From Octopus sinensis (lineage: Eukaryota), in assembly GCF_006345805.1 (NCBI RefSeq), contig NC_043019.1:4959360-5023359 (forward strand): 64,000 nucleotides of DNA, written 5' to 3'. The translations under genes were made by a program, and so were the position numbers. Positions 17,031 through 37,280 of the stretch are shown one piece after another (the first letter of the stretch is position 1; the number at the start of each line of letters is the position of its first letter). The notes beneath the pieces are model-generated. The model searched no databases. It saw only the letters and a program-made list of their open reading frames with translations, and had not been told where the DNA came from.

Positions 17031-17119
17031 GCTGGCTATGATATCAACCAAGCCCTTGTTCTCTGTCAGATGCACAACTTTACTGCTGGTATACTCTACC
17101 TTTACGAAAAGGCTGAGCT
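17031..17119 (+). CDS. VPS11: VPS11 exon: AGYDINQALVLCQMHNFTAGILYLYEKAEL
   Basis: ttctgcag acceptor, gtatgt donor, phase 0/2; matches human DKALVLCQMHDFQDGVLYLYEQGKL. Confidence 0.96.
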
Positions 17120-17533
17120 GTATGTATTACATGTGTCTTTTACTACAATTTCTCTCTCTCCCTGTATATATATATATATATATATGGAAAAAATAGTCAG
17201 GATAGAAAATGCTAAAATTATTTTATAAAAAACATTTCAGTACTGGTTTCAGTCATTGAGACTTTTCAACTGTAACAATTAAATAATTAAATTAGGGAGA
17301 CAGAGACAGGCAGAAACAAGGAAAATGCCCCTTGTATATAAACACTATACAAATATTCTTTTAAAAAAAACTTTTCTTTTAATTTTTCTAAATTTAATTA
17401 TTTAATTGCTACAGTTGAAAAAGTCTCAAATGTCCGAAACCGGTACTGAAATGTTCTTTATAAAATTATTTTAGCATTTTCTCTCTTGACTATTTTTTCC
17501 ATATATATCAACTCGTGTGTCCCTTTTCATCCT

Positions 17534-17564
<31 letters not shown>

Positions 17565-17721
17565 GTGCAAATATATAAAATGTGTATATATGCAATGTAA
17601 AACCAAAAAGGAAAAATTCAATTGTATTCACTATACTATGTACCCATTTAGATAATGGCCATTGTGTATGTATGTATGTGTGTTTATGTGTGTGTCTATA
17701 TATGTTTATGTGTATATATAT

Positions 17722-18046
17722 ATCATCATCATTTAACGTCCGCTTTCCATGCTAGCATGGGTTGGACGGTTCAACTGGGGTCTGGGGAGCCCGAAAGCTG
17801 CACCAGTCCAGTCAGATCTGGCAGTGTTTCTACAGCTGGATGCCCTTCCTAACACCAACCACTCCGAGAGTGTAGTGGGTGCTTTTATGTGCCACCGACA
17901 CAGGTGCCAGACGAGGCTGGCAAACGGCCACGCTCGGATGGTGTTTTTTATGTGCCACCGACACAGGTGCCAGACGAGGCTGGCAGACGGCCACGCTCGG
18001 ATGGTGTTTTTATGTGCCACCGACACAGGTGCCAGACGAGGCTGGC
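17722..18046 (-). mobile_element. SINE family C with internal roughly 60-bp repeats
   Basis: (CAT)n end plus repeated gccaccgacacaggtgccagacgaggc units. Confidence 0.8.
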
Positions 18047-18999
18047 GTGCACACACACACACACATACATGCAGATGTGGTCTCAAGTTCAGTTCCATAG
18101 TACAGCACCTCGGGCAACTATAACCTTGGGCCAACCAAAGCCTTGTGTGTGCATTTGGTAGACAGAAACTGAAAGAAGCCCATTGAAGATATATATATGC
18201 ATATATTTATGTGTGTGTCTGTGTTTGTACCCCCACTATTGCTTGACAATATTGACTATTGCTGGTGTGTTTATATCCCCAAAACTTAGTGGTTCAGCAA
18301 AAGAGCCCAATAGAATAAGTACTAGGCTTACAAAGAATAAGTCCTGGGGTCGATTTCTTCAATTAAAACCCTTTAAGGTGGTGCTCCAGCTTGGCTGCAG
18401 CCAAATGACTGAAACAACTAAAAGAAAAAGAAAATTCTAATACCACAACAAATTGTTTGGTAACTTAAAAACACAAATGATTTATTTTATTATATTTAAC
18501 GAAGACAGTTTTTCACCTGAAGATGTAAAATCCTTAAAAATGTTTTAGCCCAAAGGCTTCGGCCATGCTGGGGCACCACTGCTGAAAAGAAAGCTTTCCT
18601 ATCTGCGTGGGAGTCGAACCCACATCCCTTTGTTCATGCAACTAAGTGTACTACTGTTACACCAGCAAATCAGCCTGTAACTTAAATTCTGCATAATTTT
18701 GAAGGATTTCTTGCATTTTGCATTAATGCAGACATGAAAGTAATTTATTTATTATTAAATATAATAATATAAATTATTTACATGTTTTAAGCTACGAAAC
18801 AATTTGTCATGATACTAGAATTTTCTTATTGTTAAATAAAATTCCATGAAACTATTTCTCTGTCATTTATAACTTTATGCATATATATATAGTATATATA
18901 TTCTATGTTTTGTAGAATGATACATTAAGGAGCATTTTTTTTATGAGTACTGCCAGATTAGTTGAATCCATATATTGTGACTTAGATTTATATATATAC

Positions 19000-19230
19000 G
19001 AGCAGCGAGCTGGCAGAAACGTTAGCACGCCGGGCGAAATGTGTAGCCGTATTTCGTCTGTCGTTACATTCCGAGTTCAAATTCCGCCAAGGTCGACTTT
19101 GCCTATCATCCTTTCGGGGTCAATAAATTAATTATCAGTTACGCACTAGGGTCGATGTAATCGACTTAATCCCTTTGTCTGTCCTTGTTTGTCGCCTCTG
19201 TGTTTAGCCCCTTGTGGGTAGTAAAGAAAT
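19000..19230 (+). mobile_element. tRNA-derived SINE family B
   Basis: gcgagctggcagaaacgttagc...gagttcaaattcc...tagtaaagaaata. Other copies at about 7155, 24230(-), 26762-27210(- two in tandem), 31524(-), 44975(-), 45207, 49490, 49790, 52048. Confidence 0.88.
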
Positions 19231-19686
19231 ATATATATGAGCAAAATGCCCCCATGTCCAATGGATGTTGCTATGTTGTCAAACATTTAAACCAAATTTT
19301 CTCAAAACAACTTGTCCGACCGTCCCATAGATTTAACCTAAATTTGAGACACCAGCAAAAGAACAAATAAAGATAGACTTTTTTTTCTATTCCAAAGAAA
19401 AACGGTTTCCCACGGCTTTATCGATCGCATTCTTACCTGGAATCGATTTTTGTAATTTTTTCAAATTTATACAAGCCTGATACCGTCAGTATCTACATAT
19501 CAAATTTGTGCGCAATCAGATGGAGGATGCCTGAGATCCAAGAACAAACACACACACACACACATACACATACATAGAACAGATTTTATATAAGAGATAT
19601 ATGTGTGTGTGTGTGTGTGTGTGTAGATTACTATTTTTAGTGTGTTATGATGTTCCTATTGACAGCATTGTAATATTTTTTTGCAG

Positions 19687-19761
19687 TTATGAACAAATTC
19701 TACGCTATCACATGGACCATGATGAATATGGACAGGTTATTAACACATGTAAACGGTTTGG
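19687..19761 (+). CDS. VPS11: VPS11 exon: (L)YEQILRYHMDHDEYGQVINTCKRF(G)
   Basis: ttgcag acceptor, gtaagt donor, phase 2/2. Confidence 0.96.
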
Positions 19762-20059
19762 GTAAGTACAAATTTATAATTTTTCTACTGCTGAGAAGAT
19801 TCTCAGTTGAAGGTGGGTAAATATGAATGTCTTATTGCCACACATCCACAACATGGGTGATACATGTTATTGTCATGTATATATCATCATTATTATCATC
19901 ATCATCATTTAATGTCCGTTTTCCATGCTGATATGGGTTGGATGGTTTGGCAAGAGCTGGCAAGCCAAAGGGCTGCACCAGGATCCAATAGTCTGTTTTG
20001 GCTTGGTTTCTACAGCTGGATGCCCTTCCTAATGCCAACCACTTAACAGAGTGTGCCAT

Positions 20060-20580
20060 GGAGGCTTCAACACCTGGAAATGTGGTGTTGTGCATCGAGA
20101 ATTTGTCCCCTCCAGGGCCAGATCATCAATCAACAGTTCTACTGCAATCTCTTTGAAGTGTTTGAGGAAGGACATTTGGCAAAAGGGACCAGATCTGTGG
20201 AACATGAAGAATTGGGTTCTTCACCAAGCTCTCTTCACTCATGAGTTTCTCACCAAATCAACAAGGTACCACTTCCGCATCCACCCTATTCACACCAAAT
20301 TTAGCACCTGTGGACTTTCATCTCTTCCCCCAAGATGAAAATGTAGCTAAAGGTCGCTATTTTAACACCATTGTTGAGATCCGAAGCAAATCACAGGTCT
20401 TTGACTCACTTACAGAAAATGACTTTCAGGCCAGATTCCAAACCTGGCAGTAATGCTGGGACTGGTGTATTGCTGTGCAAGGTAACTATTTTGAAGGAGA
20501 TGACGTTAAAACTTAGGTGTATAAGTTTATTTTTTTTATTAAACGTAACTAGTCCTAAAGCTTTTTGATCCACCTTCGTC
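20060..20580 (+). mobile_element. mariner (DD34D) transposase 3' relic
   Basis: Frameshifted GVVHREFVP.GQ.INQQFY and HPPYS.PNLAPVDFHLFP motifs; TIR-like end ctttttgatccacc. Confidence 0.8.
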
Positions 20581-20753
20581 ATCATCATCATCATTATCAG
20601 TATCGTTTAACGTCCATTTTCCATGGTGGCATGGGTTGGACGGTAAAAATACTAACAATATAGGATGAAATCCCTTTCTCTACAGAAAAGGAATCCATCA
20701 GGAAGCGTGGCAGTGTATTAAAAAAACCTTTACGGTTGAAGTATAAACATCAT

Positions 20754-21202
20754 ATAATTAAGGGCTAAAGAAGGTTATTCAATAGCCAATGCACTGATTT
20801 ATCCACTTATAATCCACTTGCTACAGGAAAATTGAACTGAAAGCGGGCAACTAACCTTTAGAAAATTTAAATTTCGTTATCTCTATATTGAATCAATTTC
20901 GGAATTAATCTTATTTTTAGATATAAGTGATGTACTCAAGTGTAGTTATGTTTTTAGCTTGTGCTTTTTCCATGATCACACGTGAGTATTTTATTTATAT
21001 CCCATCGAAAGCTCTACTGAAGAAAGAATATATCTTTTTATAAGATTAATTCCGAAATTGATTCAATATAGAGATAACGAAATTTTAATTTTCTAAAGGT
21101 TAGTTGCCTGTTTTCAGTTTCAATTTTCCTGTAACAAGTGGATTATAAGTGGATAAATCAGTGTATTGGCTTTAGAATAACCCTCTTTAGCCCTTAATTA
21201 TA
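20754..21202. repeat. Fold-back element (about 160-bp arms, about 125-bp spacer)
   Basis: 20754-20914 is the reverse complement of 21040-21202. Confidence 0.9.
21012..21073 (+). ncRNA. Minimal type I hammerhead ribozyme motif
   Basis: CTCTA-CTGAAGA-a.gaat...attc.c-GAAA-TTGATTCAA-TA-TAGAG; 5-bp stem I, palindromic stem III, AUA cleavage triplet, A-C mismatch at the base of stem II. Confidence 0.7.
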
Positions 21203-21277
21203 AGATATAAATATATGCATATGCATGTATATCTGTTATATATATCTATTATATATATGCATGTATATCTGTTATAT

Positions 21278-21330
<53 letters not shown>

Positions 21331-21432
21331 GTATGTATATCTGTTTTATACATTAAGTTAAATTCAACATTATCAGCATTATCCTGTGTTTGATAAAATT
21401 CTTATCTATCTATCTATATTGTGTATATATAT

Positions 21433-21463
<31 letters not shown>

Positions 21464-21686
21464 ATATATAGTTTATATAAGTTATATAAGTTTCATCAGA
21501 ATCGGTTGAAAGCCGTGGTCAGAGTGAGGGTACAAGCAAACAGACACACAGAAACACGCACAGACAAACTGCCATTATATAGAGAGAGATAACAGATATA
21601 CATACAAATAAATATATATATATATATATCATCATCGTCGTCGTGATGATATATATATATATATTTATTTGTATGTATATCTGTTA

Positions 21687-22073
21687 TCTCTCTCTATATA
21701 AATGGCAGTTTGTCTGTGCGTGTTTCTGTGTGTCTGTTTGCTTGTACCCTCACTCTGACCACGGCTTTCAACCGATTCTGATGAAACTTGACACACACAT
21801 AGCCCAATGTCATAATTCAAAACTAACGCAGCGAAAATTTTGAAAAGTTCCCCCAGTTCTGAAAAAAATCGATAAATTCGACATGGGGTCGAGAATCAAA
21901 AAAAATAAACCACAGACTGTCTAGGGGACGCAACTCAACCTTTTTTTACTCTCAAAAAAAAATTTACCATCATTTTTTTTCCATTTTTTTGCTATTTTTT
22001 GGCTATAACTCTCTAAAAATGCTTTATAGTTATTTCCCTTACAAACCTGAGCAACGCCGGGCGATACTGCTAG
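21687..22073 (+). mobile_element. Non-autonomous Helitron-like element, family 3, with an inverted partial copy of its 5' end at about 21485-21590
   Basis: TC start, subterminal gcaacgccgggcgatactgc, CTAG|T end. Confidence 0.75.
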
Positions 22074-22213
22074 TATATATATATATGTGTGTGTGTATAT
22101 CTGGGAGTGTGTCACTGTGTATTAACTATGTGTTTCCCAGTTTGTAAAAACCCACTGTTGTATCGAAAATTCAATAAATATAGCTTGATTCTTTTTTTTT
22201 TCTTTCTTTCCAG

Positions 22214-22305
22214 AATTCAAGAACCAAATCTCTGGGTTCAGTCCTTGTCGTATTTTGCAATGAAAGAAGACAACTGTAAAACTTTCCTCATGGAAGTTCT
22301 TTCTC
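22214..22305 (+). CDS. VPS11: VPS11 exon: (G)IQEPNLWVQSLSYFAMKEDNCKTFLMEVLS(H)
   Basis: ttccag acceptor; ends at U12-type donor ATATCCTTT; matches human EQDPSLWEQALSYFARKEEDCKEYVAAVLKH. Confidence 0.95.
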
Positions 22306-22534
22306 ATATCCTTTGCAGATTTCATGCCTTTAATAAGTGTTTTTATTTGACACCGTCAGAAATGTGCAGAAGCATGTTTCCCTGTTGATAGCAGACTACA
22401 GCTGCTTTGGGGATGAGGATAATGCAGAGGGAGGCCAATATGCTTTATGAGACACAGTGGCTGTGAGGTATGAAGGGTGGATTACTGGACACATAACCAG
22501 AAGTTCAAATTTTACTGCAACCACTATATATGCA

Positions 22535-23565
22535 GTTGCCATGATAGGTCGTTAGCCACTACACACATTTTTTCTCTCTCCTTGTTTCATTCTGTGTTCC
22601 TTTCTGTAGAAGAGCATAGGCTCAAAACGTAAAAGACTTTTTCTATTCCTGGGCGTTATACTAATACATCTGTTTGTTTTGTACACCACCTATCTTCGTC
22701 TTTTGTTTTTTTCATAAATTCTCCCTCTTTATATATATATATATATATTAACAATTGAGGATAAAATCTTTAAAAGAAATTATCAGTAGTCAGCGTGAAA
22801 AACCCCGTAAGAGAAAAAATCCGTAAATTCTTCCTCTTTGAAAATATTCATTTATATTATATTGAGGGTACTACTATTCGTAGATACCAACACGCTAAGA
22901 GGGACCAATGCGGTCAAAACTACTAAAAATAAACAAAATTTTACCGAATGCAAAACTTCAAAACACATCACTTTAAAAAAGAATTCAGTTACATATCACA
23001 TGTGATTTCGCATTTAATACAGAATATGCATTTCATGTTCATCAGTGCAACAAACTCAAGAAATATAAGAGAAAACATAACATATATATCATAACATATA
23101 TATATATATATACATATACTTGAGTGTATACCTGAGTATTTATTTAGTGTGTTTTCTATGTTTGTTTTCTTATCTCTCTCTCTCTTTCTCATACACACAC
23201 ACACACAGACAGACATGTGTAGGTTGAAACAATCGTAGTTAAATAACATAAAACTCTACATATGTATTTCATGCTTTGATTATTAAATCTGAAAGAAGTC
23301 TTTGATGAAACCTAATTGAACAGATAGCATCATCATCACTCTATCTATCTATCTATCTATCTATATCCATCTACTTCTATCTATAGGGAGAGTTTACGAA
23401 AAAAACAAAAGACGAAGACAGGTTGTGTATAAAACAAACGGATGTATTAGTATAACGCTCAGGAATAGAAAAAGTCTTTTACGTTTCGAGCCTACGCTCT
23501 TCTACAGAAAGGGACACAGAAAAAAAGTGTGTGTAGTGGCTAACGATCTATCATGGCAACTATAT

Positions 23566-23603
<38 letters not shown>

Positions 23604-23790
23604 GGGAGAGTTTACGAAAAAAAGACGAAGACAGGTGGTGTACAAAACAAACAGATGTATTAGTATAACGCTCAGTAATAGAAAAAGTCTTTTACGTTTC
23701 GAGCCTACGCTCTTCTACAGAAAGGGACACAGAAGGAAATAAGAAGTGAAAATAAAGAATGTGTAGTGGCTAACGATCTATCATGACGAC
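22535..23790. mobile_element. Three copies of a roughly 190-bp (TA)n-flanked element (22535-22730 +, 23383-23560 -, 23600-23790 -) carrying a hammerhead-like motif
   Basis: Shared sequence gagagtttacgaaaaaa...gtggctaacgatctatcatg. Confidence 0.85.
23476..23511 (-). ncRNA. Variant ultra-minimal hammerhead-like motif (also 23689-23724 -; mutated copy 22600-22635 +)
   Basis: CTTT-CTGTAGA-A-GAGC(GTAG)GCTC-GAAA-CG-TA-AAAG; stems I and II perfect, core A6 replaced by U plus one extra A. Confidence 0.45.
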
Positions 23791-24707
23791 TGCCAGACAG
23801 AAGGGTCTCTCTATCTATCTATCTATCTGCATCTGTTTATCTCTCTATCTATCTATCTATCTATCTGTATCTGTCTGTCTGTCTCTATTCAGTTTCTCAC
23901 CTGTTAATTGCCTTACTCACTTCCATCCTTTGTCTTATTTCAATTCTTCTCTCATACTGGATACATCACCATTTTCCTCATCTCCATTTCTCTCTCACCA
24001 TACAGCATCCAAGTACATCCACTTATCAACTTCTTTTGTTTTGAATATTCTATTTCATTGCCTTTTTTTGATATTAGAAACGTTCTTCCTGTATCATAGG
24101 ATGGAATATTTTGCAATCTTCCTCGCTTTGTTGGGTTAATACTTATAAAGCTTCACCGTTTACATTACATACTGGAAAGTAAATTATGTTGGCTGGACAT
24201 TTCCCTCTCCATGTTGCTAACTAATCTTTCTTATTTCTTTACTACCCACAAGGGGCTAAACACAGGGGGGACAAACAAGGACAGACGAACAGATTAAGTC
24301 GATTATATCAACCACAGTGTGTAACTGGTACTTATTTAATCGACCCTGAAAGGATAAAAGGCAAAGTCGACCTCGGCGGAATTTGAACTCAGAACGTAGC
24401 GGTAGACAAAATACCGCTAAGCATTTCGTCCGGCGTGCTAACGTTTCTGCCAGCTTGTCGCCTTGTTGCTAACTAATGTTGGCTATTTCGGGTTGTTTAG
24501 ACCTAGGCCACATTTGATTGAAGAAGACCTTTAATTAAATGCTTTCCAGCCACGACCATCCCATATTTTCTGTGAGAGAGTATATTGTCCAATATGTCCT
24601 ATTTTTAAGATTGTAGGCTCTGATCTGAGTGAGATTTGGCTGCTATTACTGGTAAGTTAAACGACTGCAGAGAGAAGCTCTCACTGATTTGGATTATCAG
24701 ATATTCT

Positions 24708-24928
24708 CTCTTTTACTTGTTTCTGTCATTTGACTGTGGCCATGCTGGAGCACTGCCTTTAGTCGAGCAAATCGACCCCAAAACTTACTCTTTGTAAGCC
24801 TAGTACTTGTTTTATCGGTCTATTTTGCCGAACCGCTAAGTTACAGGGACGTAAACACACCAGCATTAGTTGTCAAGCAATGTTGGGGGTACAAACACAG
24901 ACACACAAACATATACATACACACATAC

Positions 24929-24959
<31 letters not shown>

Positions 24960-25130
24960 CATACATATATACGACAGGCTTCTTTCAGTTTCCGTCTACC
25001 AAATCCACTCACAAGGCTTTGGTCAGCTCGTGGCTATAGTAGATAAATACTTGTCCAAGGTGCCATGCAGTGGGACTGAACCCGGAACCATGTGGTTGGT
25101 AAGCAAGCTACTTACCACACAGTCACTCCT
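24708..25130 (-). mobile_element. SINE family A
   Basis: Full copy. Further copies: 27508-27920(-), 37792-38158(+), 41946-42338(+), 45463-45872(-), 53588-53976(-), 59688-60080(-), 61143-61482(+), 63360-63780(-). Confidence 0.9.
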
Positions 25131-25382
25131 GATAAGTAAGTAAAATGAAAAATGGCTTGACTGGAATCTGAACTCGTATCGTGTACTCGGCTGTTCAGAG
25201 ACGGCCTTTACCTTTTATCTCTCTTGCGCCAAACATAGTATGCTGCCAGATTTTTGAAAACCTGTGATGCACTTTGACGTCCCTCACAGAGCATTGCTGC
25301 ACCACTCTACCTCTGCATTGAAGTATATCTTTGTTCTTAGTGACCCTTGTTATCAAGAAAAACCTTCCTTAACACTCTTCAA

Positions 25383-25468
25383 ATATCGACAAGAAGAACC
25401 TGTTGCCTCCGTTACTCGTCATCCAGACATTGGCCAACAACTCTGCTGCTACACTGTCAGTTGTAAAG
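25383..25468 (+). CDS. VPS11: VPS11 exon: (H)IDKKNLLPPLLVIQTLANNSAATLSVVK
   Basis: Matches human HIENKNLMPPLLVVQTLAHNSTATLSVIR; gtaaat donor. Confidence 0.95.
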
Positions 25469-25637
25469 GTAAATTCCTTCATGAAAGGGGTCATTTAAGG
25501 GAGTATTTGTTGTTATTGTTTAGCTAAATGGTTCTCTACCAGGATCCATAAGGCCCTTGAGGGTCCTTATAAGATTTTGCTGTTAAAATTTATTACCAAT
25601 AAATTGCTTTTAGTTCTGAATACAATCCCTAATAATA

Positions 25638-26033
25638 TCTTTATATATAAAAGTGAGGTTGTGTGCTGTCTGTCTCCTACGATTTAGATTCCTAACTACT
25701 CCCACATTTTGCGGTGCAGTTTAACCAAAACCGGGTATCTTATAGTCGTGATTCATATCGAGCCCTTCTGGGTATTAGCGCGTGTCTACGATGAGTCTAC
25801 GATTTAAAAAAAATTTACCATCAATTTTTCCCATTTTTAATGCATTTTTGGCATATATAAGGGAAGTAACTCTCTAAAAATTTATTATTAAATCTCAGAA
25901 CATAAAAAGCTACAGTGACACCCCCCCCTTTGTGGTTAGCCATATTGAGATGGCTATTATACTTTACATCTCTAAAAATGCTTATTTAGTTATTTCCCTT
26001 ACAAACCCAAGCAACGCCGGGCGATACTGCTAG
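25638..26033 (+). mobile_element. Non-autonomous Helitron-like element, family 1
   Basis: A|TCTTTATATATAAAAG ... gcaacgccgggcgatactgCTAG|T, no TSD; other copies at 43515-43910(-) and 60236-60627(+). Confidence 0.82.
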
Positions 26034-26074
26034 TTTAATAATAAAACAATAATAGAATTTTTTTTTTTACACAT

Positions 26075-26365
26075 TGGCCCACAGCTCTTCAATATCATCC
26101 CGAAGGACTTGAGAGACCTGCATTTGGTGGATGCAGATGTCTTTAAAATAAAACTGGATCTCTTCCTGTCAGGTGTCCCAGATGAACCAACTTCACGGCA
26201 GGAGGTGCAGATGAGGGCAGCTGCATCAAACTCTCTCATGCACCAAATGGCAATTGCTAAAAAGCATTCGTGAAGTAAAATCATGTAGCAACACCAAATG
26301 GTGGTGCCCCAGCATGGCCACAGCTTGTGAGCTGAAACTAGATAAAATAAAATAAAATAAAAATA
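26075..26365 (+). mobile_element. CR1/Jockey-group LINE 3' end with (AAAAT)n tail
   Basis: IGPQLFNIIPKDLRDL...FKIKLDLFLSGVPDEP, followed by a 3' UTR and tail. Confidence 0.75.
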
Positions 26366-27468
26366 AATTGGGGTCCATAGATAAAAAAATAATTGAGAAC
26401 CACTGGTTTGGGCAACGGTCAATTCTAGTCAAGTAGACATTATCAAAGACGTTCCAACTTTGACCATCCCATCTGTTATTTTCAGATATTGTATATCTAA
26501 GACAACATTAACCAAAGTGCCCTTTTGTTTTATAACAACAGTATGTAATACAAAGTGTGTTTGGCTGCTCCTTTTAGCAGATTTTGTGATTGCTTTTGTT
26601 AGCTCAATATATATCCTGTTGTTTAGATCCAGGACATCTCTGACGAAGCAGACACATTCAAAAGCCTTCTAGCCATGACTGTCACTTTTACTCATATGAC
26701 GTATGCAGGACTACGTTAGCCGTGTCCCTCAGACATAGCACATCTCAAGTCATGGTGTTCTTATTTCTTTATTGCCCACAAGGGGCTAAACACAGAGGGG
26801 ACAGACAAAGGGATTAAGTCGACTGTATTGACCCCAGTGCGTAACTGGTACTTAATTTATTGACCTCGAAGGGACAAAAGGCAAAGTCGACCTCAGCAGA
26901 ATTTGAACTCAGAACGTAAAGACAGACGAAATACCACTAAGCATTTCGCCCGGTGTGCTAACGTTTCTGCCAACTCGCCGCCTTGCTATTTCTTTTACTA
27001 CCCACAAGGGGTTAAACATAGAGGGGACAAACAAGGACAGACAAAGGGATTAAGTTGATTACATCGACCTAAGTGTGTAACTGGTACTTAATTTATCGAC
27101 CCCGAAAGGACGAAAGGCAAAGTCGTCCTCGGCGGAATTTGAACTCAGAACGCAAAGACAGACCGCTAAGCATTTCGCCTGGTGTGCTAACGTTTCTGCC
27201 AACTCGCTGTTCTTATCTACTGCCATCTTGAGTTACCAGTTAGCAATTTGTTGCTATATTCTATCAAGACAAAATTACAGAAAAGGTTTTATAACGTAGG
27301 AGCTGTTCTTTTTATCTCCAGATACAGTTTTGTGTCATTTGGGAAAGAAATCATTAAGAAGGAAAATCTCTTATAACCCACTCACTATGAATTTCATCTT
27401 CTTCTAAGGGACTCCTTGTAGTCTCCAAGCCCATGAAAGGATTTAAATCCACTTTCTGTGGAACAGAC

Positions 27469-28113
27469 TTAACCCTTTTGTTACTGCATTTATTTTGAGA
27501 TGCTCTCTTTTACTCTTTTACTTGTTTCAGTCATTTGACTGCGGCCATGCTGGAGCACCGCCTTTAGTCGAGCAAATCGACCCTGGGACTTATTCTTTGT
27601 AAGCCCAGTACTTATTCTATCGGTCTCTTTTGCCGAACCGCTAAGTGACGGGGATGTAAACACACCAGCATCGGTTGTCAAGCAATGCTAGGGGGACAAA
27701 CACAGACACACAAACACACACACACACACACACATATATATACATATACATATATACGATGGGCTTCTTTCAGTTTCCGTCTACCAAATCCACTCACAAG
27801 GCATTGGTTGGCCTGGGGCTATAGCAGAAGACACTTGCCCAACATGCCACACAGTGGGACTGAACCCGGAACCATGTGGTTGGTAAGCAAGCTACTTACC
27901 ACACAGCCACTCCTGCGCCTATGTGTTTCTTTCAATTAATTTTGGATATAACAAAGAATTTAGTAAAATAACTTAGTTATCATTCAGCTAGTGTTAGGAA
28001 CATAAATTGTAACTAAGGTTTGGTGGAAGATTTTAATTCAGAACTTCTGAAAACAAGACATTTGTACTCAGAGCCAGAGCTGGTTTCAGCCGGGTTGGTA
28101 ACGAAAGGGTTAA
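27469..28113. mobile_element. piggyBac-type MITE interrupted by SINE A
   Basis: TTAA|CCCTTT ... AAAGGG|TTAA; related copies at about 10190-10449, 31069-31299, 46225-46949, 54509-54737. Confidence 0.82.
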
Positions 28114-28450
28114 GCTGTTGCCTGGTTTGACAACACCAACACCTCAACCAGAACTGTGGGTGCTCTTAGTATAGTCCACTCTCTCACAAACATTCAGATT
28201 AGGTATTTGGCCTGGGTATGTCTTCCTCGCATCAGTCTTGGAAGCTCTGCAAGAAGGTCATGGCCATTTCCCTTTCTCTTCTCACGAAGCCTTTAAAAAT
28301 TAAAATACAAAATATCAATTATGCACTGATCCCAGCTGCGGCCCACAGCAATAAATTGCATGGTTCCTATTTGTAATTAGATGGACTGAGCCAGTGAAAA
28401 TTAATTTTTTTTCTTTTCTGTATTTTTTATCACATAATCAGCTTAGTTTC

Positions 28451-28488
<38 letters not shown>

Positions 28489-28517
28489 GTAAGTTTACAT
28501 GAGGTTAGTGTGTGTGC

Positions 28518-28557
<40 letters not shown>

Positions 28558-28631
28558 TTGAGGTAGCTTCTGCAAGATCCGTATGCTTCTGTGCCTGCAA
28601 TGATGTGAGTTTGTTTTCTCTTCCACCGAAG

Positions 28632-28753
28632 GACTATATTGTCAAGCGCCTGCAGCAAGAAAATGATCAGATAACTGAAGACGAACGGCTTATCCAACAA
28701 TATAGGGAAGACACTCTGAAGAAAAAAAACCAAATTGAAGAATTAAAGACTTC
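28632..28753 (+). CDS. VPS11: VPS11 exon: DYIVKRLQQENDQITEDERLIQQYREDTLKKKNQIEELKT(S)
   Basis: gaag acceptor, gtaagt donor, phase 0/2; coiled coil preceding the RING. Confidence 0.96.
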
Positions 28754-28831
28754 GTAAGTTCCATTTGCTTTGCTTTTTCTTTTTTCTTTTTACCTTCTGT
28801 TTCATCTCCCTCTGATTTGCAAATTAACAAA

Positions 28832-30310
28832 GGCACGTAAAAAGCACCATCCGACCGTGGCCGTTTGCCAGCCTCGCCTGGCCTCCATGCCAGTGGCACG
28901 TAAAAAGCACCATCCAATCGTGGCCGTTTGCCAGCCTCGCCTGGCCTCCATGCCAGTGGCACGTAAAAAGCACCATCCGATCGTGGCCGTTTGCCAGCCT
29001 CGCCTGGCCTCCATGCCAGTGGCACGTAAAAAGCACCATCCAATCGTGGCCGTTTGCCAGCCTCGCCTGGCCTCCATGCCAGTGGCACGTAAAAAGCACC
29101 ATCCGATCGTGGCCGTTTGCCAGCCTCGCCTGGCCTCCATGCCAGTGGCACGTAAAAAGCACCATCCAATCGTGGCCGTTTGCCAGCCTCGCCTGGCCTC
29201 CATGCAGTGGCACGTAAAAAGCACCATCCGATCGTGGCCGTTTGCCAGCCTCGCCTGGCCTCCATGCCAGTGGCACGTAAAAAGCACCATCCGATCGTGG
29301 CCGTTTGCCAGCCTCGCCTGGCCTCCATGCCAGTGGCACGTAAAAAGCACCATCCAATCGTGGCCGTTTGCCAGCCTCGTGTGGCACGTAAAAAGCACCA
29401 TCCGATCGTGGCCGTTTGCCAGCCTCGCCTGGCCTCCATGCCAGTGGCACGTAAAAAGCACCATCCGATCGTGGCCGTTTGCCAGCCTCGCCTGGCCTCC
29501 ATGCCAGTGGCACGTAAAAAGCACCATCCGATCGTGGCCGTTTGCCAGCCTCGCCTGGCCTCCATGCCAGTGGCACGTAAAAAGCACCATCCAATCGTGG
29601 CCGTTTGCCAGCCTCGCCTGGCCTCCATGCCAGTGGCACGTAAAAAGCACCATCCAATCGTGGCCGTTTGCCAGCCTCGCCTGGCCTCCATGCCAGTGGC
29701 ACGTAAAAAGCACCATCCGATCGTGCCGTTTGCCAGCCTCGCCTGGCCTCCATGCCAGTGGCACGTAAAAAGCACCATCCAATTGTGCCGTTTGCCAGCT
29801 CGCCTGGCCTCCATGCCAGTGGCACGTAAAAAGCACCATCCAACCGTGGCCGTTTGCCAGCCTCGCCTGGCCTCCATGCCAGTGGCACGTAAAAAGCACC
29901 ATCCAATCGTGGCCGTTTGCCAGCCTCGTGTGGCACGTAAAAAGCACCATCCGATCGTGGCCGTTGCCATCCTCACCTGGCCTCCGTTTTGGTGGCACGT
30001 AAAAAGCACCATCTGATCGTGGCCGTTTGCCAGCTCCGTCTGGCACCTGTGCAGGTGGCACGTAAAAAGCACCATCTGATTGTAGCCGTTTGCCAGCCTC
30101 GTCTGGCGCCTGTACCGGTGGCACGTAAAAGGCACCCACTACACACATGGAGAGGTTGGCATTAGGAAGGGCATCCAGCCATAGAAACATTGCCAGATCA
30201 GACTGGGCCTGGTGCAGCCTTCTGGCTTCCCAGACCCCAGTTGAACCGTCCAACCCATGCCAGTATGGAAAGCGGATGCTAAACGACGATGATGATGATG
30301 ATGATGATGA
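28832..30310 (+). repeat. 63-bp minisatellite (about 21 copies, to about 30130) expanded inside a SINE-C element ending in (GAT)n
   Basis: Unit ggcacgtaaaaagcaccatccgatcgtggccgtttgccagcctcgcctggcctccatgccagt. Confidence 0.95.
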
Positions 30311-30879
30311 AAACCATTGAAACCATCCCAAAGATGATATCAGAGTTCAACATAGCCCTGCAGCTCACTAGTTCCGTGTCAGACCATCCTACCCATGGAA
30401 ACATATGATGATAGTAGTGGCAGCAGCAGTGCCGTCATCATCCTGAAAGATTATCCCCACCTCGCTCTCTCTCTCTGTCTCTCAATTGGCACAAAGAAAA
30501 TCCAGAAATATATACCACAATTTCTCACCTGAATTTAGTGCTTGGTTGTCAAAAATCAAGCCTCTTTCTTATATTTTCATTTTATTTCTCTTCCATCTTG
30601 TAAGAAATTCTTCAAAAATTGGTTCATCTGTTAAACAGTCTTCTTGTAATGAAGTATTGTATTACCTATGTAAATCAGATACCACCCCCCCTTTCTGTCC
30701 TTTTTTTAATAGTCTTTAGCAAGGATATACTGCACGTTAGCATTTGTGGGATTACTGTTCTGATACAAATTGCTAGAAACAACTGAAAATACTATTCTTA
30801 TAATGGCCATTAATGAAGGCCTGTCTTTAGTCATAAAGTCATATGCCTTGTTTAACCTGCTTAATTTCCAATTTTCCAG

Positions 30880-30978
30880 CGCAAAGATCTTCCAAGCCCC
30901 TAAATGCAGTATTTGTAACCATCCTTTGGAAATCCCTTCGGTACATTTTCTCTGTGAACCTCACTCTTACCATCAACA
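30880..30978 (+). CDS. VPS11: VPS11 exon, RING-H2 first half: AKIFQAPKCSICNHPLEIPSVHFLCEPHSYHQ(H)
   Basis: ttccag acceptor, gtaagt donor, phase 2/2. Confidence 0.97.
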
Positions 30979-32869
30979 GTAAGTAACACAGAATTTATTA
31001 TTTGCTGTATTTACATAAAAAAAGAAACTGTGTGAATCTTGTGGTCTCATATCTTGTATGTAACATACTTAACCCTTTACTGTTCAAATATTTGGGCAAT
31101 ATCAGGGCCCAAATATTCTATCCTTTTTACAATAAAACCAGCCAGGTCTGGCTTCTCATACCTACCCTACAATGTCATTCTAAAAATAAACAATCACATC
31201 TTTGAAATCTCAAAGCTACAAGATAATGTGTGATTAATTCAAAACAATGTGAATAAATATGCATTACACTTGACAATAGTTTGTATGTTAAAGGGTTAAA
31301 ATAAGAAACTCTGGCAAAACTGTGGCTTTCAACGGTTTGAGTACTCACCTGGAAAGCACCTGGTAACATCGTTCGATACAAAGTTGAATAAAGGAACTAA
31401 TGTCAGTCATTAACCATCCAAGTTTAAATTTTCATTTCCAACATGTACCATGTTCACATCATTTACATGGTAAATGTTTGTGGCAAAGGCATGAATGCTA
31501 CATTATTGACTCTCAATACCTATTTCTTTACTACCCCCAAGGGGCTAAACACAGAGGGGACAAACAAGGACAGACAAACAGATTAAGTCGATTACATCGA
31601 TCTCAGTGCGTAACTGGTACTTAATTTATTGACCACGAAATGATGAAAGGCAAAGTCGACCTCGGCGGAATTTGAACTCAGTACGTAATGGCAGACGAAA
31701 TACCGCTAAGCATTTCACCTGGCGTGCTAACGATTCTACCAGCTCGCTGCCTTAATATCATATGTACCGTGCAATAATATAAGTGTTAAAATACCAGAAA
31801 TAGATTAGATTAATTTATTTTCAAGATCAATATCAAAATTTGCAAAAAACAAATGTGTCAGTGGTTTCCAACCAGAGATTCAGAGACAGTGGCTAAAGAT
31901 GTGGTGAGGTTTATTCTGGAGTTTATTTTATCTCTGTTGGGACAAAACAAGAATTGTCATGGGGCTTAAGCATAAGAAAAAAGAATGATGAGCTCACAAA
32001 AATGTTGGACACCACTTATGAAGTTCACTTATTGGTTAACCCTCTGGCATTTCATCTAGCCATATCCAGTCTAAATACTCTACCTGTTTTATGTTTAAAA
32101 AAATGATACGGCCAGTTTGAATTCTATAGGGTTAAGTCAGTCATAATATCTCGATTCCAGAAGGTAGAAAGGCAAATTTGACCGTGACAAGATTTCAAAA
32201 TGCAAAAGACATAACAAAATGCATAAGGAATTTTGTTGATGCTGTACCATGTTTCTAATGGAGGCAAAAGGCCTGAAATTGGTGCGAGGTGTTTCACCAT
32301 CGTCTGGTTGAGCTTCCTCGGACACTTTTAACCTACACACATCATCACGCACTTTGGTCTTGCATTGGTCGAGGGAAGTCTTCAGGGGAGGCATCCAGTG
32401 TCTCTGCTGAATTGATGTCTGTTGTGTCCTGATGACCTGCTTCAGTACAGCCACACTTTGGCTTCTGTAGCAGTAAGTCATTTTCCAACTCTTGTTTAGC
32501 TTGCTGGCAATGTCCCACAAAGTGCAAACGCCCTTACCCTATAATGGTGAAGATAGACACATTTAATTTCATAGAAAGAAACTGCAAGGAAGCCCATCTT
32601 TTTATATATGTCTTTGTGTATGTTGTATGAGCATTTTCACATTAACACCACTTGGACAGTCGTGATGCTACATAAATAGTCCAGTTATTTGGAAGGCCAA
32701 CATACAAAAGTGTCAGAGTATCCTACTTGAAAACAAGAGTTGCCATCAGGAAGGGCATCTAGTTGTGGCAATACTGGCCTCTAGAACCTTTCTTCAACTC
32801 ATGCATGGGTTGTAAAAACAATATATATATATATATATATAGACATAATCAAAATTTTATATAAATACA

Positions 32870-33214
32870 CTAGCACTATGACCCGGCAACGTCAGGTCAT
32901 AATGCTAGTGCATGCATATACAGCTGTGTGCATGCGCACATACACGCGAGTACTGTCCAAATCTCCGACCAATCACATACAGCTAGCTGGCATTCAATTG
33001 GCATATCAAGTTTCAGGCATTTTGATTGGGTTTTCAATAGAAAATTCTATTGATTTTTTAATGGCTTTGCGGGGTGGCTGGGGAAATGTAAAGATGTGCA
33101 CAACCACCCTTGGACGGTTTTGAATGACCATAGAAAGTGCGAGCCCTCTAACTGAAAAATTGTGGATTTTTTAAAGGACACGCACACAGACATTTTGCTG
33201 TTTGTATATATAGA
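32870..33214 (-). mobile_element. Non-autonomous Helitron-like element, family 2
   Basis: Minus strand: TCTATATATAC start, hairpin tatgacc...ggtcata, CTAG|T end. Confidence 0.8.
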
Positions 33215-33629
33215 TATGCATGATAGACAATAGGAGCTGCTAATTATGAACACTTTGAAATGAATCTTTTAATAATTACTGGCTGATAAGGTGAGGCAAA
33301 TAAAGAATTCAAGGACCACAAATTTGGTGACAATAACTAATTGGTAATATTATTTGTAATTGTAATAAACATCTTCTACAGCTTGAACACAAATAAGTAC
33401 AAATACCGTAGATAAGGGAAACTAAGGGAGTGGGGGGTTGTCACCTTGGTTTGCAATAGTAATATAAAGCCAGATAATTTATAATAGGAATGATATTTAA
33501 GCAAATTACTTCATCTGCACAATAATTCTATAGCCATTAATTACAAAAGTCATTCCTAAATTCAATAAAATAGTTGTTTTTTTTAATAGAATCTAACAAT
33601 TTCTTTTTTCCTCTCTCTCTCTTTACTAG

Positions 33630-33683
33630 CTGTTTTGAATGTTATGGTGAAAATGAATGCCCTGTTTGTATGCAAGAAAACAG
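33630..33683 (+). CDS. VPS11: VPS11 exon, RING-H2 second half: CFECYGENECPVCMQEN(R)
   Basis: tactag acceptor, gtaaga donor, phase 2/2. Confidence 0.96.
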
Positions 33684-33809
33684 GTAAGATCTTTATTTAT
33701 TTTATCTTATCATTTAAGACAAGATACCTTCTTTTGTATGTCACTTTCTTCCTTTTCCCTTGCTCATCAACCAAACAGCTTTACCATAGAGGACGTGCTC
33801 CCTTTTCCT

Positions 33810-34745
33810 GTAAGTTACAAGACTTTAGGGCTGCAGCAATAAATATAGGCATAATGATAGGTAGGTTTAGTGAGTTTGTGGAAATGCTGGAACAGAGACA
33901 AGTGGTTGTGTGTTGTGTGCAAGAGGAAAGATGGAAGGAATCCTCAATCACACTCTTCACAGGCAAGAGACAGCAGTACAAATTTTTCTGGCTGAGTAAT
34001 AGAGACAAGGCATACTCTTACCTGAGAAATAGCTAAAGTAATTGAGGTAGTCAGTGTTTCTAATTATAGGCAACTTAATAACAACATTCATCTTGGCAGA
34101 AGTCATTAAGTGGATATTAAAAATGACTCCCCACTGCAGACAGGACAGAAGAACCACTTCTGTGAGACCCTGACAGTAACCTCATTATTGTGGCCAGCAA
34201 CATCAATGGATGTTGGCCAAAACAGTGATGATTTCAGCAGTATACATGGAGGCTATGGTTTATGGTTCAAGAAATGAGGAGGGTGTATGATACCTGGAGT
34301 TCTGTGATGCAAGTGATCTAACAATTTGCAAGACATTTTAGGAAGCCAAATAAACACCCACCCGTCTGGCGAGCACCAGTTGGACAGGTTACACTCTCAA
34401 CAGTAGTGCTATTGTAAATACCAAAACCTTTCTTGAAAAAGAATATATTATGCAACATAGATTAGTGACCATTGACTGAAATGAAAGACAACATGGAAAA
34501 GGAAAATATGGAAACTAAAAGAGCTTGCGATTAAGAATAGATTTAGAGAAATTCTAACTGACCCTAAGATGGCAGAGGGGAAGATTTAGATATCTGTAGC
34601 ATAGATGACACCTGAAAATTCCTATGAAGTCACCTACTTAGGGTTATTGAAGCAAAGACCCAGCCCAGCCAGAACTAACATGGTGGTGGAATGATGATGT
34701 AGGTGGTGGATGGTAAAGGCTAAGTGAGAGGCTTGGGAAACCTAG
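33810..34745 (+). mobile_element. Decayed RTE-clade LINE, AP-endonuclease region
   Basis: INIGIMIGR...VCCVQEERWK...YKFFW and GGYG..RNEEG...LEFCDA motifs. Confidence 0.7.
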
Positions 34746-35589
34746 AAGGTAACAACCTTCATCCACTCACTCCTGGTCTCTCTGACCCACTTGTATCTAC
34801 CCACCTTGTACCTTGAAGGTCCACCTAATCACTCCCACCCCTCTTCTTAAATGTGAGTAGTCATGTGACTCCCCTACTGAAAGAAACCTGTTCTGCAGTG
34901 ACCCCATTTCTCATATTTTTACCTCCTTCCCATAAAACAGCCCCCTTCAAGGTTCGTTGTCTGTCTTACAAGCTACATGACAACGTCACCAGTGCTGGTA
35001 CCTTGAAAATAGCTCCCAGTGCACATTGTGATGTGGTTGGCCTTAGGAAAGGTATTCAACCATAGAAACCATGCCAAAGCAGATATCAAAGCACAATCCA
35101 ACCATTGGGCCCATCACATCCTATCCAACCCTGCCAACATCATCATCATAAATGCTGGCATGGGGCTAGATGGTTTGACAGTTGCTGAGAAGCCCAGGGA
35201 GCTGCACCAGGCTCCATTCTCTATTCTGGCATGGTTTCTACAGCTAGATACCCATCCTAACACCAACCACTTTACAGTGTGTAATGGGTGCTTTTTTTTT
35301 CCGTGGGACCAACACCAATGCTTTTCATGTGGCACTATATCAGTACTTTTTACATCAATTTTGTTGATGATGATGATTTTTTTTTTAAAGACAATAGGAT
35401 GGAGTTTGCAGGGAATTTGACTGCTATTTTTAGTAGCCATTCAGATTTTTTATAGAACCTTTCTCATGGCTAAACCTAATTTCAAGTATGTTGTGTACAT
35501 ATGATTGTTGCATAAACTGTTGTAGCTGACTATTATATATATATATATATTTATATAAATGTAATATGTAACAATTATTCGGTAGCCAT

Positions 35590-35650
35590 GATAAAACTCC
35601 GAGTTTCGGATGCCGAGGTGGAAATCCATGCCACCATCTCTTCAGTTATC
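35590..35650 (-). ncRNA. Minimal type I hammerhead ribozyme motif
   Basis: Minus: GATAA-CTGAAGA-GATG GTGG..CCAC..CATC c-GAAA-CTCGGAG-TT-TTATC. Confidence 0.75.
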
Positions 35651-35713
35651 CGGCCATCGGAAACATGCTATGAAAATGCTATGATTTTTTTCATGGCATT
35701 TTTCCGATGGCTG

Positions 35714-35774
35714 GATAACTGAAGAGATGGCAGCATGGATTTCCACCTCGGCATCCGAAACTCGGAGTTTTATC
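35714..35774 (+). ncRNA. Minimal type I hammerhead ribozyme motif
   Basis: GATAA-CTGAAGA-GATG...CATC c-GAAA-CTCGGAG-TT-TTATC; 5-bp stem I, near-palindromic stem III, GUU triplet. Confidence 0.75.
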
Positions 35775-36270
35775 ATGGCTACCGAATAATTGTCACATAT
35801 TACATTTACAGATAAATTCCTCTATTTACATAATATCAAGGTCTCTTTCTCTCTTCTGTTGTCTTACTATTTTTATCAATATATATATATATTATATTTC
35901 TTTATCTTTTATTAAACTTTTAATACTTTTGATATTTAAAAAAAAAAATGTAAATAAATAAATAAATAAAAGAATATATAAATATAAAAATATACATACA
36001 TACATATAGATATATTTGTATATATATATAAAATTTATAAGTTTAAATTATTTAAATAATTTTTTATTTTTTACTTTTATATTTTTAAATTAATTTTATG
36101 TATTGGCTTATGTTTTTCACTGTTTGATTTGCCTAATAGTGATTTTATCTCTAATATAATATAATATAATATATTTATACTATAAAATTGGATTTAATTC
36201 TAAATCTAATTTTTCCCTGTAAGTTTGGATTTATTCCCTAATATTATTATAATATATATATATATATAAT

Positions 36271-36796: not shown

Positions 36797-37016
36797 GTTA
36801 TTATATGATCAAACGCCACGCGTCGTCTTCTTCCAAGTAAGTTTTATATATATATATATATATATTCGGTTAAGTAATTGAGATTCTGGTGAATTCTAAA
36901 GAATTCACATGAATATGGTCCTTAATTAGGATGCACCGGAAATCTATATGGTGTTAACCATACGACAAGTGGGGTGATTACAAATAGGAAAAAAGCAACA
37001 AGAATGGATTAAAATC

Positions 37017-37100
37017 TCGGTACGATCGTTTCGTACGAGGACATCTTTAATAAGCTACAAAAAATGCAGTGAATACAGATGGCTCGTACTCGTCAGCCGA
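37017..37100 (-). ncRNA. Canonical minimal type I hammerhead ribozyme (antisense arm)
   Basis: Reverse complement of 37169-37252. Confidence 0.85.
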
Positions 37101-37252: not shown

Positions 37253-37280
37253 GATTTTAATCCATTCTTGTTGCTTTTTT

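What the first reader, a model, noticed from the sequence alone, without database searches (positions are those of the whole stretch)
22306..25382. Minor-spliceosome intron with rare AT-AA ends in VPS11
Seen: the donor reads ATATCCTTTG and a perfect U12 branch point TTCCTTAAC lies at 25365-25373. The only register that both keeps the conserved ...VLSH-IDKKNLLPP... frame and matches the U12 donor consensus ends the intron at AA (25381-25382). The nearby AC at 25389-25390 would frameshift, and the U2-type AG at 25339-25340 runs into an in-frame TAA at 25370. ATATC recurs at both junctions, so aligners may mis-place the intron. Established: U12 introns mostly use GT-AG or AT-AC; AT-AA is a rare variant. 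Inference: at about 3.1 kb and full of TE insertions, this may be a rate-limiting or NMD-coupled step for VPS11.
Basis: partly seen in the sequence, partly recalled or inferred. Interest (0 to 1): 0.75.

Follow-up and report, generated by a model that had tools for sequence, protein, structure and literature searches.

The report
Ancient minor-spliceosome AT-AA intron in VPS11
The 3.1-kb gap in this animal's VPS11 gene is a genuine minor-spliceosome (U12-type) intron with the uncommon AT...AA ends, inherited from before cnidarians and bilaterians split, so it is a well-supported but ordinary example of a known intron class.

Summary
Exon ...TCTC is followed by ATATCCTTT (22306-22314). TTCCTTAAC lies at 25365-25373, and the intron ends in AA (25381-25382), 10 nt after the branch A. 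Six splice registers give the same mRNA, but only 22306-25382 has a U12 donor. No canonical GT/GC-AG pair keeps the invariant residues.

The strongest support comes from other species. An intron at the same codon and phase, with U12 signals, is present in:
- Nematostella (GT-AG);
- the annelid Ridgeia and at least 13 distinct annelid-like metagenome contigs (AT-AC);
- two coral-like contigs that are also AT-AA. A spliced, cDNA-like contig from a close relative of these shows exactly the predicted junction.

The intron is absent from priapulid, sea cucumber, gar and eel, and from several unidentified contigs.

It is not the known human VPS11 U12 intron, which lies near the N-terminus.

"Full of TE insertions" overstates the case: two SINE-like repeats plus microsatellites cover about a quarter of the intron, and its length matches its neighbours. 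The rate-limiting and NMD ideas are plausible but untested.

Verdict: a new member of a known kind, of modest interest.

The parts
22214..22305 (+). VPS11 exon upstream of the intron. It encodes (G)IQEPNLWVQSLSYFAMKEDNCKTFLMEVLS plus the first base of the His codon.
   Evidence: Preceded by the acceptor ...tttccag. tblastn matches relatives. The reading frame runs on from the neighbouring exons.
22306..22314 (+). U12-type 5' splice site ATATCCTTT
   Evidence: Matches RTATCCTTT at 9 of 9 positions. It lies exactly at the frame-preserving exon end. Orthologous donors are C|ATATCCTT in annelids and C|GTATCCTTT in Nematostella.
22306..25382 (+). U12-type intron, 3,077 nt, phase 1, termini AT...AA
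   Evidence: Orthologous introns.
24228..24465 (.). Copy of an interspersed repeat about 230 bp long (SINE-like) inside the intron
   Evidence: Six near-full-length copies at 83-90% identity, plus weaker partial matches, elsewhere in the window.
24708..25131 (.). Copy of an interspersed repeat about 425 bp long (SINE-like, with an internal ACAT/AT microsatellite) inside the intron
   Evidence: At least 12 full or partial copies at 78-94% identity elsewhere in the window. Microsatellite.
25365..25373 (+). U12 branch-point sequence TTCCTTAAC. The presumed branch A is at 25372.
   Evidence: Matches TTCCTTRAC at 9 of 9 positions. The branch A is 10 nt from the intron's last base.
25381..25382 (+). 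3' terminal dinucleotide AA
   Evidence: This is the only 3' end that pairs with the ATATCCTTT donor and reproduces the gapless ...EVLSHIDKK... alignment. The same AA end is seen in L060 and L071.
25383..25468 (+). VPS11 exon downstream of the intron. It encodes (H)IDKKNLLPPLLVIQTLANNSAATLSVVK and is followed by the donor GTAAAT.
25389..25390 (+). Nearby AC, 18 nt from the branch A. It is a possible cryptic U12 acceptor, and its use would shift the frame.
   Evidence: Its use removes 8 extra nt and gives a stop codon in the next exon.
17031..41456 (+). Span of the C-terminal part of VPS11 modelled here. Exons: 17031-17119, 19687-19761, 22214-22305, 25383-25468, 28632-28753, 30880-30978, 33630-33683, 37332-37398, 41364-41456. 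An earlier exon lies near 3339-3422.
   Evidence: tblastn to relatives. Splice-site inspection and continuous translation. Pfam TPR_PEP5_VPS11 and VPS11_C. The end of the last exon is uncertain.

Best explanation
Window 22306-25382 is a U12-type (minor-spliceosome) intron of the A-type AT-AN subclass, with AT-AA termini. It splits the His codon (C|AT, phase 1) of the conserved ...EVLSH|IDKKNLLPP... segment in the C-terminal repeat region of VPS11.

Proposed mechanism (inferred from established minor-spliceosome biology, not tested here). The U11/U12 di-snRNP recognises ATATCCTTT and TTCCTTAAC together. The 3' cleavage site is set mainly by its short distance, about 10-11 nt, from the branch A. 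The last nucleotide is tolerated as A instead of C.

Origin (shown by comparison). The intron is old, not a new insertion. It was already U12-type before cnidarians and bilaterians diverged. It has since changed terminal subtype among lineages (GT-AG, AT-AC, AT-AA) and has been lost several times. The SINE-like repeats and microsatellites are later passengers that lengthened it, as they did its neighbours.
For: Shown directly:
- Donor and branch point each match consensus at 9 of 9 positions, placed at the only frame-preserving register.
- The branch A is 10 nt from the 3' end and there is no pyrimidine tract. The seven other introns in the gene model are GT-AG with pyrimidine tracts.
- Only six in-frame GT/GC-AG combinations exist nearby. 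All delete or replace invariant residues and use weak donors (invariant columns).

Comparative evidence, same codon and phase:
- Nematostella: C|GTATCCTTT...ATTCTTGACCATTGCAAG|AC.
- Ridgeia: C|ATATCCTTT...TACCTTGACAATGTGGCAC|AT.
- At least 13 distinct annelid-like contigs and L063-65: AT-AC.
- L066 and L069: GT-AG U12-type.
- L060 and L071: AT-AA, reading C|ATATCCTTT...TTCCTTAATCACAAGTCAA|ATATCGAT.

Splicing evidence in a relative. L014 is a partly spliced, cDNA-like contig. It is 100% identical to genomic L068 across exon D and 95-96% identical to L060/L071. It joins the exons as ...CTCTCTC|ATATAGATCG, which is the predicted junction.

Literature:
- The consensus motifs are RTATCCTTT and TTCCTTRAY. 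The 3'-most nucleotide is tolerant of substitution in AT- introns, and AT-AA has been observed (PMC1635337).
- AT-AA is the commonest non-canonical minor-intron terminus in animals (PMC10639083).
Against: - No RNA evidence from this species was available, so the junction here is inferred.
- The AA rests on a single assembly. Annelid orthologues have AC at that place.
- An AC lies 8 nt downstream, 18 nt from the branch A, and could compete.
- Each motif alone occurs at chance frequency in the window.
- Presence of the minor spliceosome in this organism was not tested. The Rfam scan of the window found no snRNA genes, as expected for 64 kb.
Confidence: 0.88

Rival explanations
1. It is a U12 intron, but the terminal AA is an assembly or sequencing error, or a minor allele. 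The true end would be AC, making it a plain AT-AC intron.
For: Annelid orthologues end in AC at the equivalent base. Only one sequence of this species is available.
Against: Two independent coral-like contigs have AA at the same intron. A spliced contig from their close relative shows the junction. AT-AA is the commonest non-canonical U12 terminus. The local sequence is not a homopolymer or other obviously error-prone context beyond AAA.
Confidence: 0.06
2. The productive splice uses canonical U2-type sites or an unrecognised extra exon, and the U12-like motifs are coincidental.
For: Each motif alone is at chance frequency in the window.
Against: No GT/GC-AG pair keeps the invariant V, L, I and D residues. 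Any AG acceptor upstream of 25383 meets TAA at 25370. The alignment to relatives with an uninterrupted exon is gapless. Orthologous introns are U12-type.
Confidence: 0.02
3. The intron is a recent lineage-specific gain, for example by insertion of a mobile element, with the ATATC direct repeat as a target-site duplication.
For: ATATC flanks both junctions. The intron is absent from L001/L002, Priapulus, Apostichopus, gar and eel. It contains repeat copies.
Against: The same position, phase and U12 signals occur in a cnidarian, in annelids and in other lineages. The ATAT repeat follows simply from the donor ATATCC meeting the His-Ile codons C|AT ATH, and it is also present in Ridgeia. L001/L002 have also lost another widely conserved intron, the one at 37399-41363 in the window.
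Confidence: 0.01
4. This VPS11 copy is a decaying pseudogene, so the odd 3' end has no consequence.
For: The AA terminus is non-canonical. The RING motif has one extra residue (C-E-P-H).
Against: Nine consecutive exons are open and conserved, with good splice sites, and give Pfam hits above cut-off. The C-E-P-H variant is shared with an expressed-looking relative, P0008.
Confidence: 0.03

Closest known systems
AT-AN ('A-type') U12 introns, specifically AT-AA. Human examples listed as U12 AT-AA are PIGB and MSH3 (supplement of PMC8280824).
   Same: ATATCCTT donor, TCCTTAAC-type branch point close to the 3' end, and a final nucleotide A instead of C. This is a recognised subclass: the commonest non-canonical minor termini and described as a tolerated variant.
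   Different: Different gene and intron. Nothing is mechanistically different as far as the sequence shows.
Human VPS11 U12 AT-AC intron (chr11:119068011-119069195, NM_021729.5). It is strongly retained on CENATAC depletion.
   Same: Same gene family and same intron class (A-type U12). It even has the same ATAT overlap at both junctions: GGAG|ATATCC...CTGCAC|ATATGG.
   Different: Different position. The human intron splits ...VFGD|MEG... in the N-terminal beta-propeller. I placed it by homology to the VPS11_N exon of L001 and from my own recollection of the human protein. The window intron lies in the C-terminal repeat region. Gar and eel have no intron at the window's position. The N-terminal part of the gene lies outside the window.
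Orthologous VPS11 introns in Ridgeia piscesae (AT-AC) and Nematostella vectensis (GT-AG, U12-type)
   Same: Identical codon position and phase 1, U12 donor and branch point, and a branch A 10-12 nt from the 3' end.
   Different: Terminal dinucleotides differ (AC or AG against AA). Lengths differ: 372 nt and 2,544 nt against 3,077 nt.
Coral-like metagenome contigs L060 and L071 (AT-AA), with the spliced contig L014
   Same: Same intron, same AT-AA termini, and an almost identical 3' end: TTCCTTAAT-CACAAGTCAA|ATATCGA against TTCCTTAAC-ACTCTTCAA|ATATCGA.
   Different: Distant lineage. The protein resembles Nematostella (...RGNLMSPLLVLQ...), so the AA end is either an old retained state or arose twice. 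I could not decide which.

Membership tests
U12-type (minor-spliceosome) intron | 5' splice site matching RTATCCTTT from the first intron base | tested here: met
   ATATCCTTT at 22306-22314, 9 of 9 positions. Consensus as given in PMC1635337.
U12-type (minor-spliceosome) intron | Branch-point sequence matching TTCCTTRAY | tested here: met
   TTCCTTAAC at 25365-25373, 9 of 9 positions.
U12-type (minor-spliceosome) intron | Branch point close to the 3' splice site (about 10-15 nt) with no polypyrimidine tract | tested here: met
   The branch A at 25372 is 10 nt from the last intron base. The upstream sequence is TCAAGAAAAACC, and the neighbouring introns have clear pyrimidine tracts. The distance range is from my own knowledge of the field.
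U12-type (minor-spliceosome) intron | Orthologous introns in other lineages are also U12-type | tested here: met
   Nematostella, Ridgeia, at least 13 annelid-like contigs, L060, L063-66, L069 and L071.
U12-type (minor-spliceosome) intron | Exon-exon junction observed in RNA of this species | not testable with these tools
   No protein or contig from this species' transcriptome was returned; the best hits were 70% identical or less over the 251-aa query. The only RNA-like evidence is from a coral-like relative, L014.
U12-type (minor-spliceosome) intron | Splicing depends on the U11, U12, U4atac and U6atac snRNPs | not testable with these tools
   This needs an experiment. The Rfam scan of the window found no snRNA genes, which is uninformative for 64 kb.
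AT-AA subtype of U12 introns | Intron begins AT and ends AA at the junction actually used | tested here: met
   Of the six registers giving the same mRNA, only the AT-AA register has a U12 donor. This depends on the assembly being correct at 25382.
Orthologue of the known human VPS11 U12 intron | Same position in the protein alignment | tested here: not met
   The human intron flanks read GTCTTTGGAG|...|ATATGG (V F G D|M), which is N-terminal (homologous segment in L001). The window intron lies in the C-terminal region. Gar and eel are uninterrupted there.
VPS11 (HOPS/CORVET subunit) | PEP5/VPS11 repeat region, RING-H2 and VPS11_C domains; best hits named VPS11 | tested here: met
   Pfam PF23356 (97 bits) and PF12451 (60 bits). 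NCBI-named VPS11 homologues are 57-69% identical. The N-terminal half lies outside the window.

The most novel reading that the evidence does not exclude
The AA end at the minimal distance from the branch point and the AC 8 nt downstream might form a competing pair of U12 acceptors. In that case part of the VPS11 pre-mRNA would be frameshifted or retained and destroyed by NMD. That would give this lineage (and, in parallel, corals with the same AA end) a minor-spliceosome-dependent control on HOPS/CORVET dosage. A further possibility is that ancestral VPS11 carried two U12 introns, kept differentially in vertebrates (N-terminal) and in lophotrochozoans and cnidarians (C-terminal).
Probability: 0.12. 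Interest if true: 0.45.

Novelty: new member of a known kind. Interest (0 to 1): 0.3.

Why it matters
For annotation, this intron is invisible to GT-AG-only gene finders and ambiguous for aligners. The deposited Ridgeia VPS11 model is visibly broken at this very intron. Fixing the junction restores 30 conserved residues.

For evolution, it is a clean example of one ancient U12 intron that shows all three terminal subtypes across animals. It has been lost repeatedly, and a U2-type intron occupies the same site in an unidentified microbial-mat eukaryote. It is useful material for studying subtype switching and U12 loss or conversion.

It does not reveal a new mechanism.

Tried and rejected
- Literature searches for VPS11 together with 'U12-type intron' or 'minor intron' found nothing in full text. 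The human VPS11 U12 intron turned up only in the supplement of the CENATAC paper. The IAOD paper's stored supplement had no gene list.
- The first protein search, with the 59-aa peptide, gave only two hits. Both proved useful as intron-less genomic relatives.
- Organism identification failed. Rfam and tRNA scans of the window were empty. A reverse-transcriptase fragment gave only unnamed hits and one tapeworm hit. The two SINE-like repeats look to me like octopus SINEs, but that is recollection only.
- The second RTATCCTTT match in the window (48325) has no coding context, and I regard it as chance.
- Recent intron gain with a target-site duplication was considered and rejected on the orthologue evidence.
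- The Homalodisca intron looked like a match at first. It lies 6 nt downstream and is U2-type, so I do not count it as the same intron.
- My automated junction table mis-registered several loci that have indels or read-through. Those were resolved by eye.
Full report
**1. What is in the sequence**

The + strand reads ...ATG GAA GTT CTT TCT C|ATATCCTTTGCAG... with the bar after 22305. It later reads ...AAAAACCTTCCTTAACACTCTTCAA|ATATCGACAAGAAGAACCTG... with the bar after 25382.

Joining 22305 to 25383 gives IQEPNLWVQSLSYFAMKEDNCKTFLMEVLSH-IDKKNLLPPLLVIQTLANNSAATLSVVK. The His codon is split C|AT, so the intron is phase 1.

ATATC occurs at both junctions, so six registers (shift 0 to +5) produce the identical mRNA. 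Their termini are AT-AA, TA-AA, AT-AT, TC-TA, CC-AT and CT-TC. Only shift 0 begins with the U12 donor ATATCCTTT.

TTCCTTAAC is at 25365-25373. Its second A (25372) lies 10 nt from the last intron base.

- The AC at 25389-25390 removes 8 more nt and gives a stop in the next exon.
- The AG at 25339-25340 runs into TAA at 25370-25372.
- Intron retention gives a stop after 27 intronic codons.

**2. Is it more than chance?**

Taken alone, each motif occurs at background frequency in the window. RTATCCTTT has 2 matches against 1.97 expected, and TTCCTTRAC has 2 against 1.25 expected.

The signal lies in the placement. The donor sits at the single frame-preserving position. The branch point sits within the few positions that put it 9-17 nt from the frame-preserving 3' end. 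From the background rates I estimate a joint probability of about 1e-9 (my arithmetic, not a tool output).

**3. The gene**

tblastn with ORFs from two related genomic contigs located ten conserved exons on the + strand. I refined nine of them into a continuous model:

17031-17119, 19687-19761, 22214-22305, 25383-25468, 28632-28753, 30880-30978, 33630-33683, 37332-37398, 41364-41456.

- The spliced 251-aa protein hits Pfam TPR_PEP5_VPS11 (97 bits) and VPS11_C (60 bits).
- It is 57-69% identical to NCBI-named VPS11 homologues.
- The seven other introns are 2.1-4.0 kb, GT-AG, with good pyrimidine tracts. Only this one is AT...AA with a purine-rich stretch where a tract would be.
- So the gene looks functional, and the intron's 3.1-kb size is unremarkable.

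**4. No canonical alternative**

I enumerated every GT or GC donor in 22260-22420 against every AG acceptor in 25300-25440. Only six in-frame, stop-free combinations exist. All use weak donors (GAA|GTTCTT or CAT|GCCTTT). All delete or replace residues that are invariant across 11 aligned relatives.

**5. Comparative evidence (the decisive part)**

The first protein search returned two short ORFs on genomic ENA contigs, L001 and L002. There the two exons form one uninterrupted exon, with the flanking splice sites conserved. Taken alone, this would suggest a lineage-specific intron in the window.

Fetching named genomes settled the direction of change.

| Species or locus | State at this codon |
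|---|---|
| Nematostella vectensis | ...GTC TTG TCC C\|GTATCCTTTTGC ... ATTCTTGACCATTGCAAG\|AC ATC AAC: same codon, same phase, U12-type GT-AG |
| Ridgeia piscesae (annelid) | ...GTC CTT GCT C\|ATATCCTTTCAC ... TACCTTGACAATGTGGCAC\|AT ATA GAC: U12-type AT-AC |
| Priapulus, Apostichopus, gar, eel | Uninterrupted. The two fishes instead have an intron after ...LMPPLL |

One scan of metagenome contigs with an alignment of this segment gave 71 loci. They fall into these groups:
- AT-AC with U12 signals: at least 13 distinct annelid-like sequences and L063-65.
- GT-AG with U12 signals: L066 and L069.
- L062: an AG acceptor 12 nt after AGCCTTAAC.
- AT-AA: L060 and L071, whose protein resembles Nematostella. 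They read C|ATATCCTTT ... TTCCTTAATCACAAGTCAA|ATATCGAT.
- U2-type: L076-78, from an unidentified eukaryote, carry a 72-74-nt intron (A|GTACGT...CAG|) at the same codon and phase.

L014 is a partly spliced, cDNA-like contig. It is 100% identical to genomic L068 over exon D and 95-96% identical to L060/L071. It joins three successive exon pairs that are separated in the genomic contigs. At this junction it reads ...CTCTCTC|ATATAGATCG. That is splicing evidence for the AT-AA form, but in a relative and not in this species.

L001/L002 also lack the widely conserved intron that lies at 37399-41363 in the window. They lack the human-type N-terminal U12 intron too. This fits intron loss in that lineage.

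The most economical reading is this: a U12 intron was present before the cnidarian-bilaterian split, was lost repeatedly, and had its terminal subtype switched.

**6. Relation to what is known**

- U12DB gives the consensus motifs RTATCCTTT and TTCCTTRAY. It states that the 3'-most nucleotide is tolerant of substitution, especially in AT- introns, and that AT-AA has been observed (PMC1635337).
- Larue and Roy report AT-AA as the commonest non-canonical minor terminus in animals. Non-canonical termini make up about 3.8% of conserved animal minor introns. They also report molluscs as relatively rich in minor introns (PMC10639083).
- Human VPS11 is already a known minor-intron gene. Its AT-AC intron (GTCTTTGGAG|ATATCCTTCG...CTCCTTGAC...CTGCAC|ATATGG) splits V-F-G-D|M near the N-terminus (supplement of PMC8280824; positional homology).
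- The window's intron is therefore a different intron of the same gene, and the vertebrates examined lack it.

**7.

Retention, or use of the +8 AC, would create premature stops upstream of several exon junctions. The transcripts would then be NMD candidates. In human cells A-type minor introns show higher basal retention and depend on CENATAC.

That makes a kinetic bottleneck plausible, but nothing here tests it. Nothing distinguishes this intron from any other A-type U12 intron.

On the TE claim, two interspersed repeat copies are visible at 24228-24465 and 24708-25131. Each has many copies elsewhere in the window at 77-94% identity. There are also several microsatellites. Together about a quarter of the intron is repeat-derived. 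The intron is not full of TEs.

**8. Limits**

- There is no RNA from this species.
- The AA rests on one assembly.
- The organism is unidentified.
- The taxonomic labels I give to metagenome contigs rest only on protein similarity to named species.

**9. Verdict**

The feature is a genuine, ancient U12-type AT-AA intron: a new member of a well-described kind.

Its interest is modest. It has practical value for annotation, since the Ridgeia model is broken at this intron. It also has some value as a case of subtype switching and repeated loss.

Noticed in passing
L005 (Ridgeia piscesae JAODUO010000028.1) about 9052-9594: The deposited gene model (P0016) skips the exon encoding ...NLWIQALAYFARKEENCKQQIIEVLA. 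It uses an AG upstream of the U12 branch point and reads TTACCTTGACAATGTGGCAC as coding (YLDNVAH). This looks like an annotation error caused by the AT-AC intron.
   Followed up: partly
L014 (Ga0099814_1224317) 1380-1739: A partly processed transcript-like contig. Its first roughly 1.3 kb looks like a retained upstream intron, while the next three introns, including the U12 one, are removed.
   Followed up: partly
L076-L078 (microbial-mat and metagenome contigs): An unidentified eukaryote has a 72-74-nt U2-type intron (A|GTACGT...CAG|AT) at exactly the same codon and phase as the U12 intron. This could be a U12-to-U2 conversion or an even older intron position.
   Followed up: no
L079 (Homalodisca vitripennis) 3060-3906: The insect has a U2-type, phase-1 intron 6 nt downstream of the U12 position, in the codon after the conserved Ile. 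Whether it is homologous to the U12 intron is unclear.
   Followed up: no
window 37399-41363; L001, L002, L005: This GT-AG intron (...FHNE|LDRVQDGF...) is shared with Nematostella, Priapulus and gar. It is missing in L001/L002 and Ridgeia, so intron loss is common in this gene.
   Followed up: partly
window 30940-30978: The RING-H2 motif reads C-E-P-H-S-Y-H, with one residue more than the C-x-H of the other relatives. Only the Logan transcript-like protein P0008 shares this, which suggests P0008 comes from a nearer relative.
   Followed up: no
window 24228-24465 and 24708-25131, with copies at e.g. 4360-5369, 27513-27915, 45462-45867, 50093-50986, 59687-60078, 63370-63774: Two high-copy SINE-like repeat families are scattered through the window on both strands. 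Some lie in near-tandem clusters around 50.1-51.0 kb. From memory they resemble octopus SINEs (unverified).
   Followed up: partly
window 57485-58589: A very regular tandem array: 9 copies of a 123-bp unit at 99% identity, with long ORFs on the minus strand that are probably meaningless. An adjacent TAC/CAA-rich low-complexity block lies at 58982-59336.
   Followed up: no
window 54726-55085 (-): A reverse-transcriptase fragment with a YIDDLL motif. Relatives carry Pfam PF00078. It is a retroelement remnant downstream of VPS11.
   Followed up: partly
window 48325-48333: The second RTATCCTTT match in the window (GTATCCTTT, + strand) has no recognisable exon upstream. I judge it a chance match.
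   Followed up: partly
L001 273-470: In this relative the segment homologous to the human N-terminal U12 intron site (...QIILSD|HEGALYF...) is uninterrupted. This organism therefore lacks both VPS11 U12 introns.
   Followed up: partly
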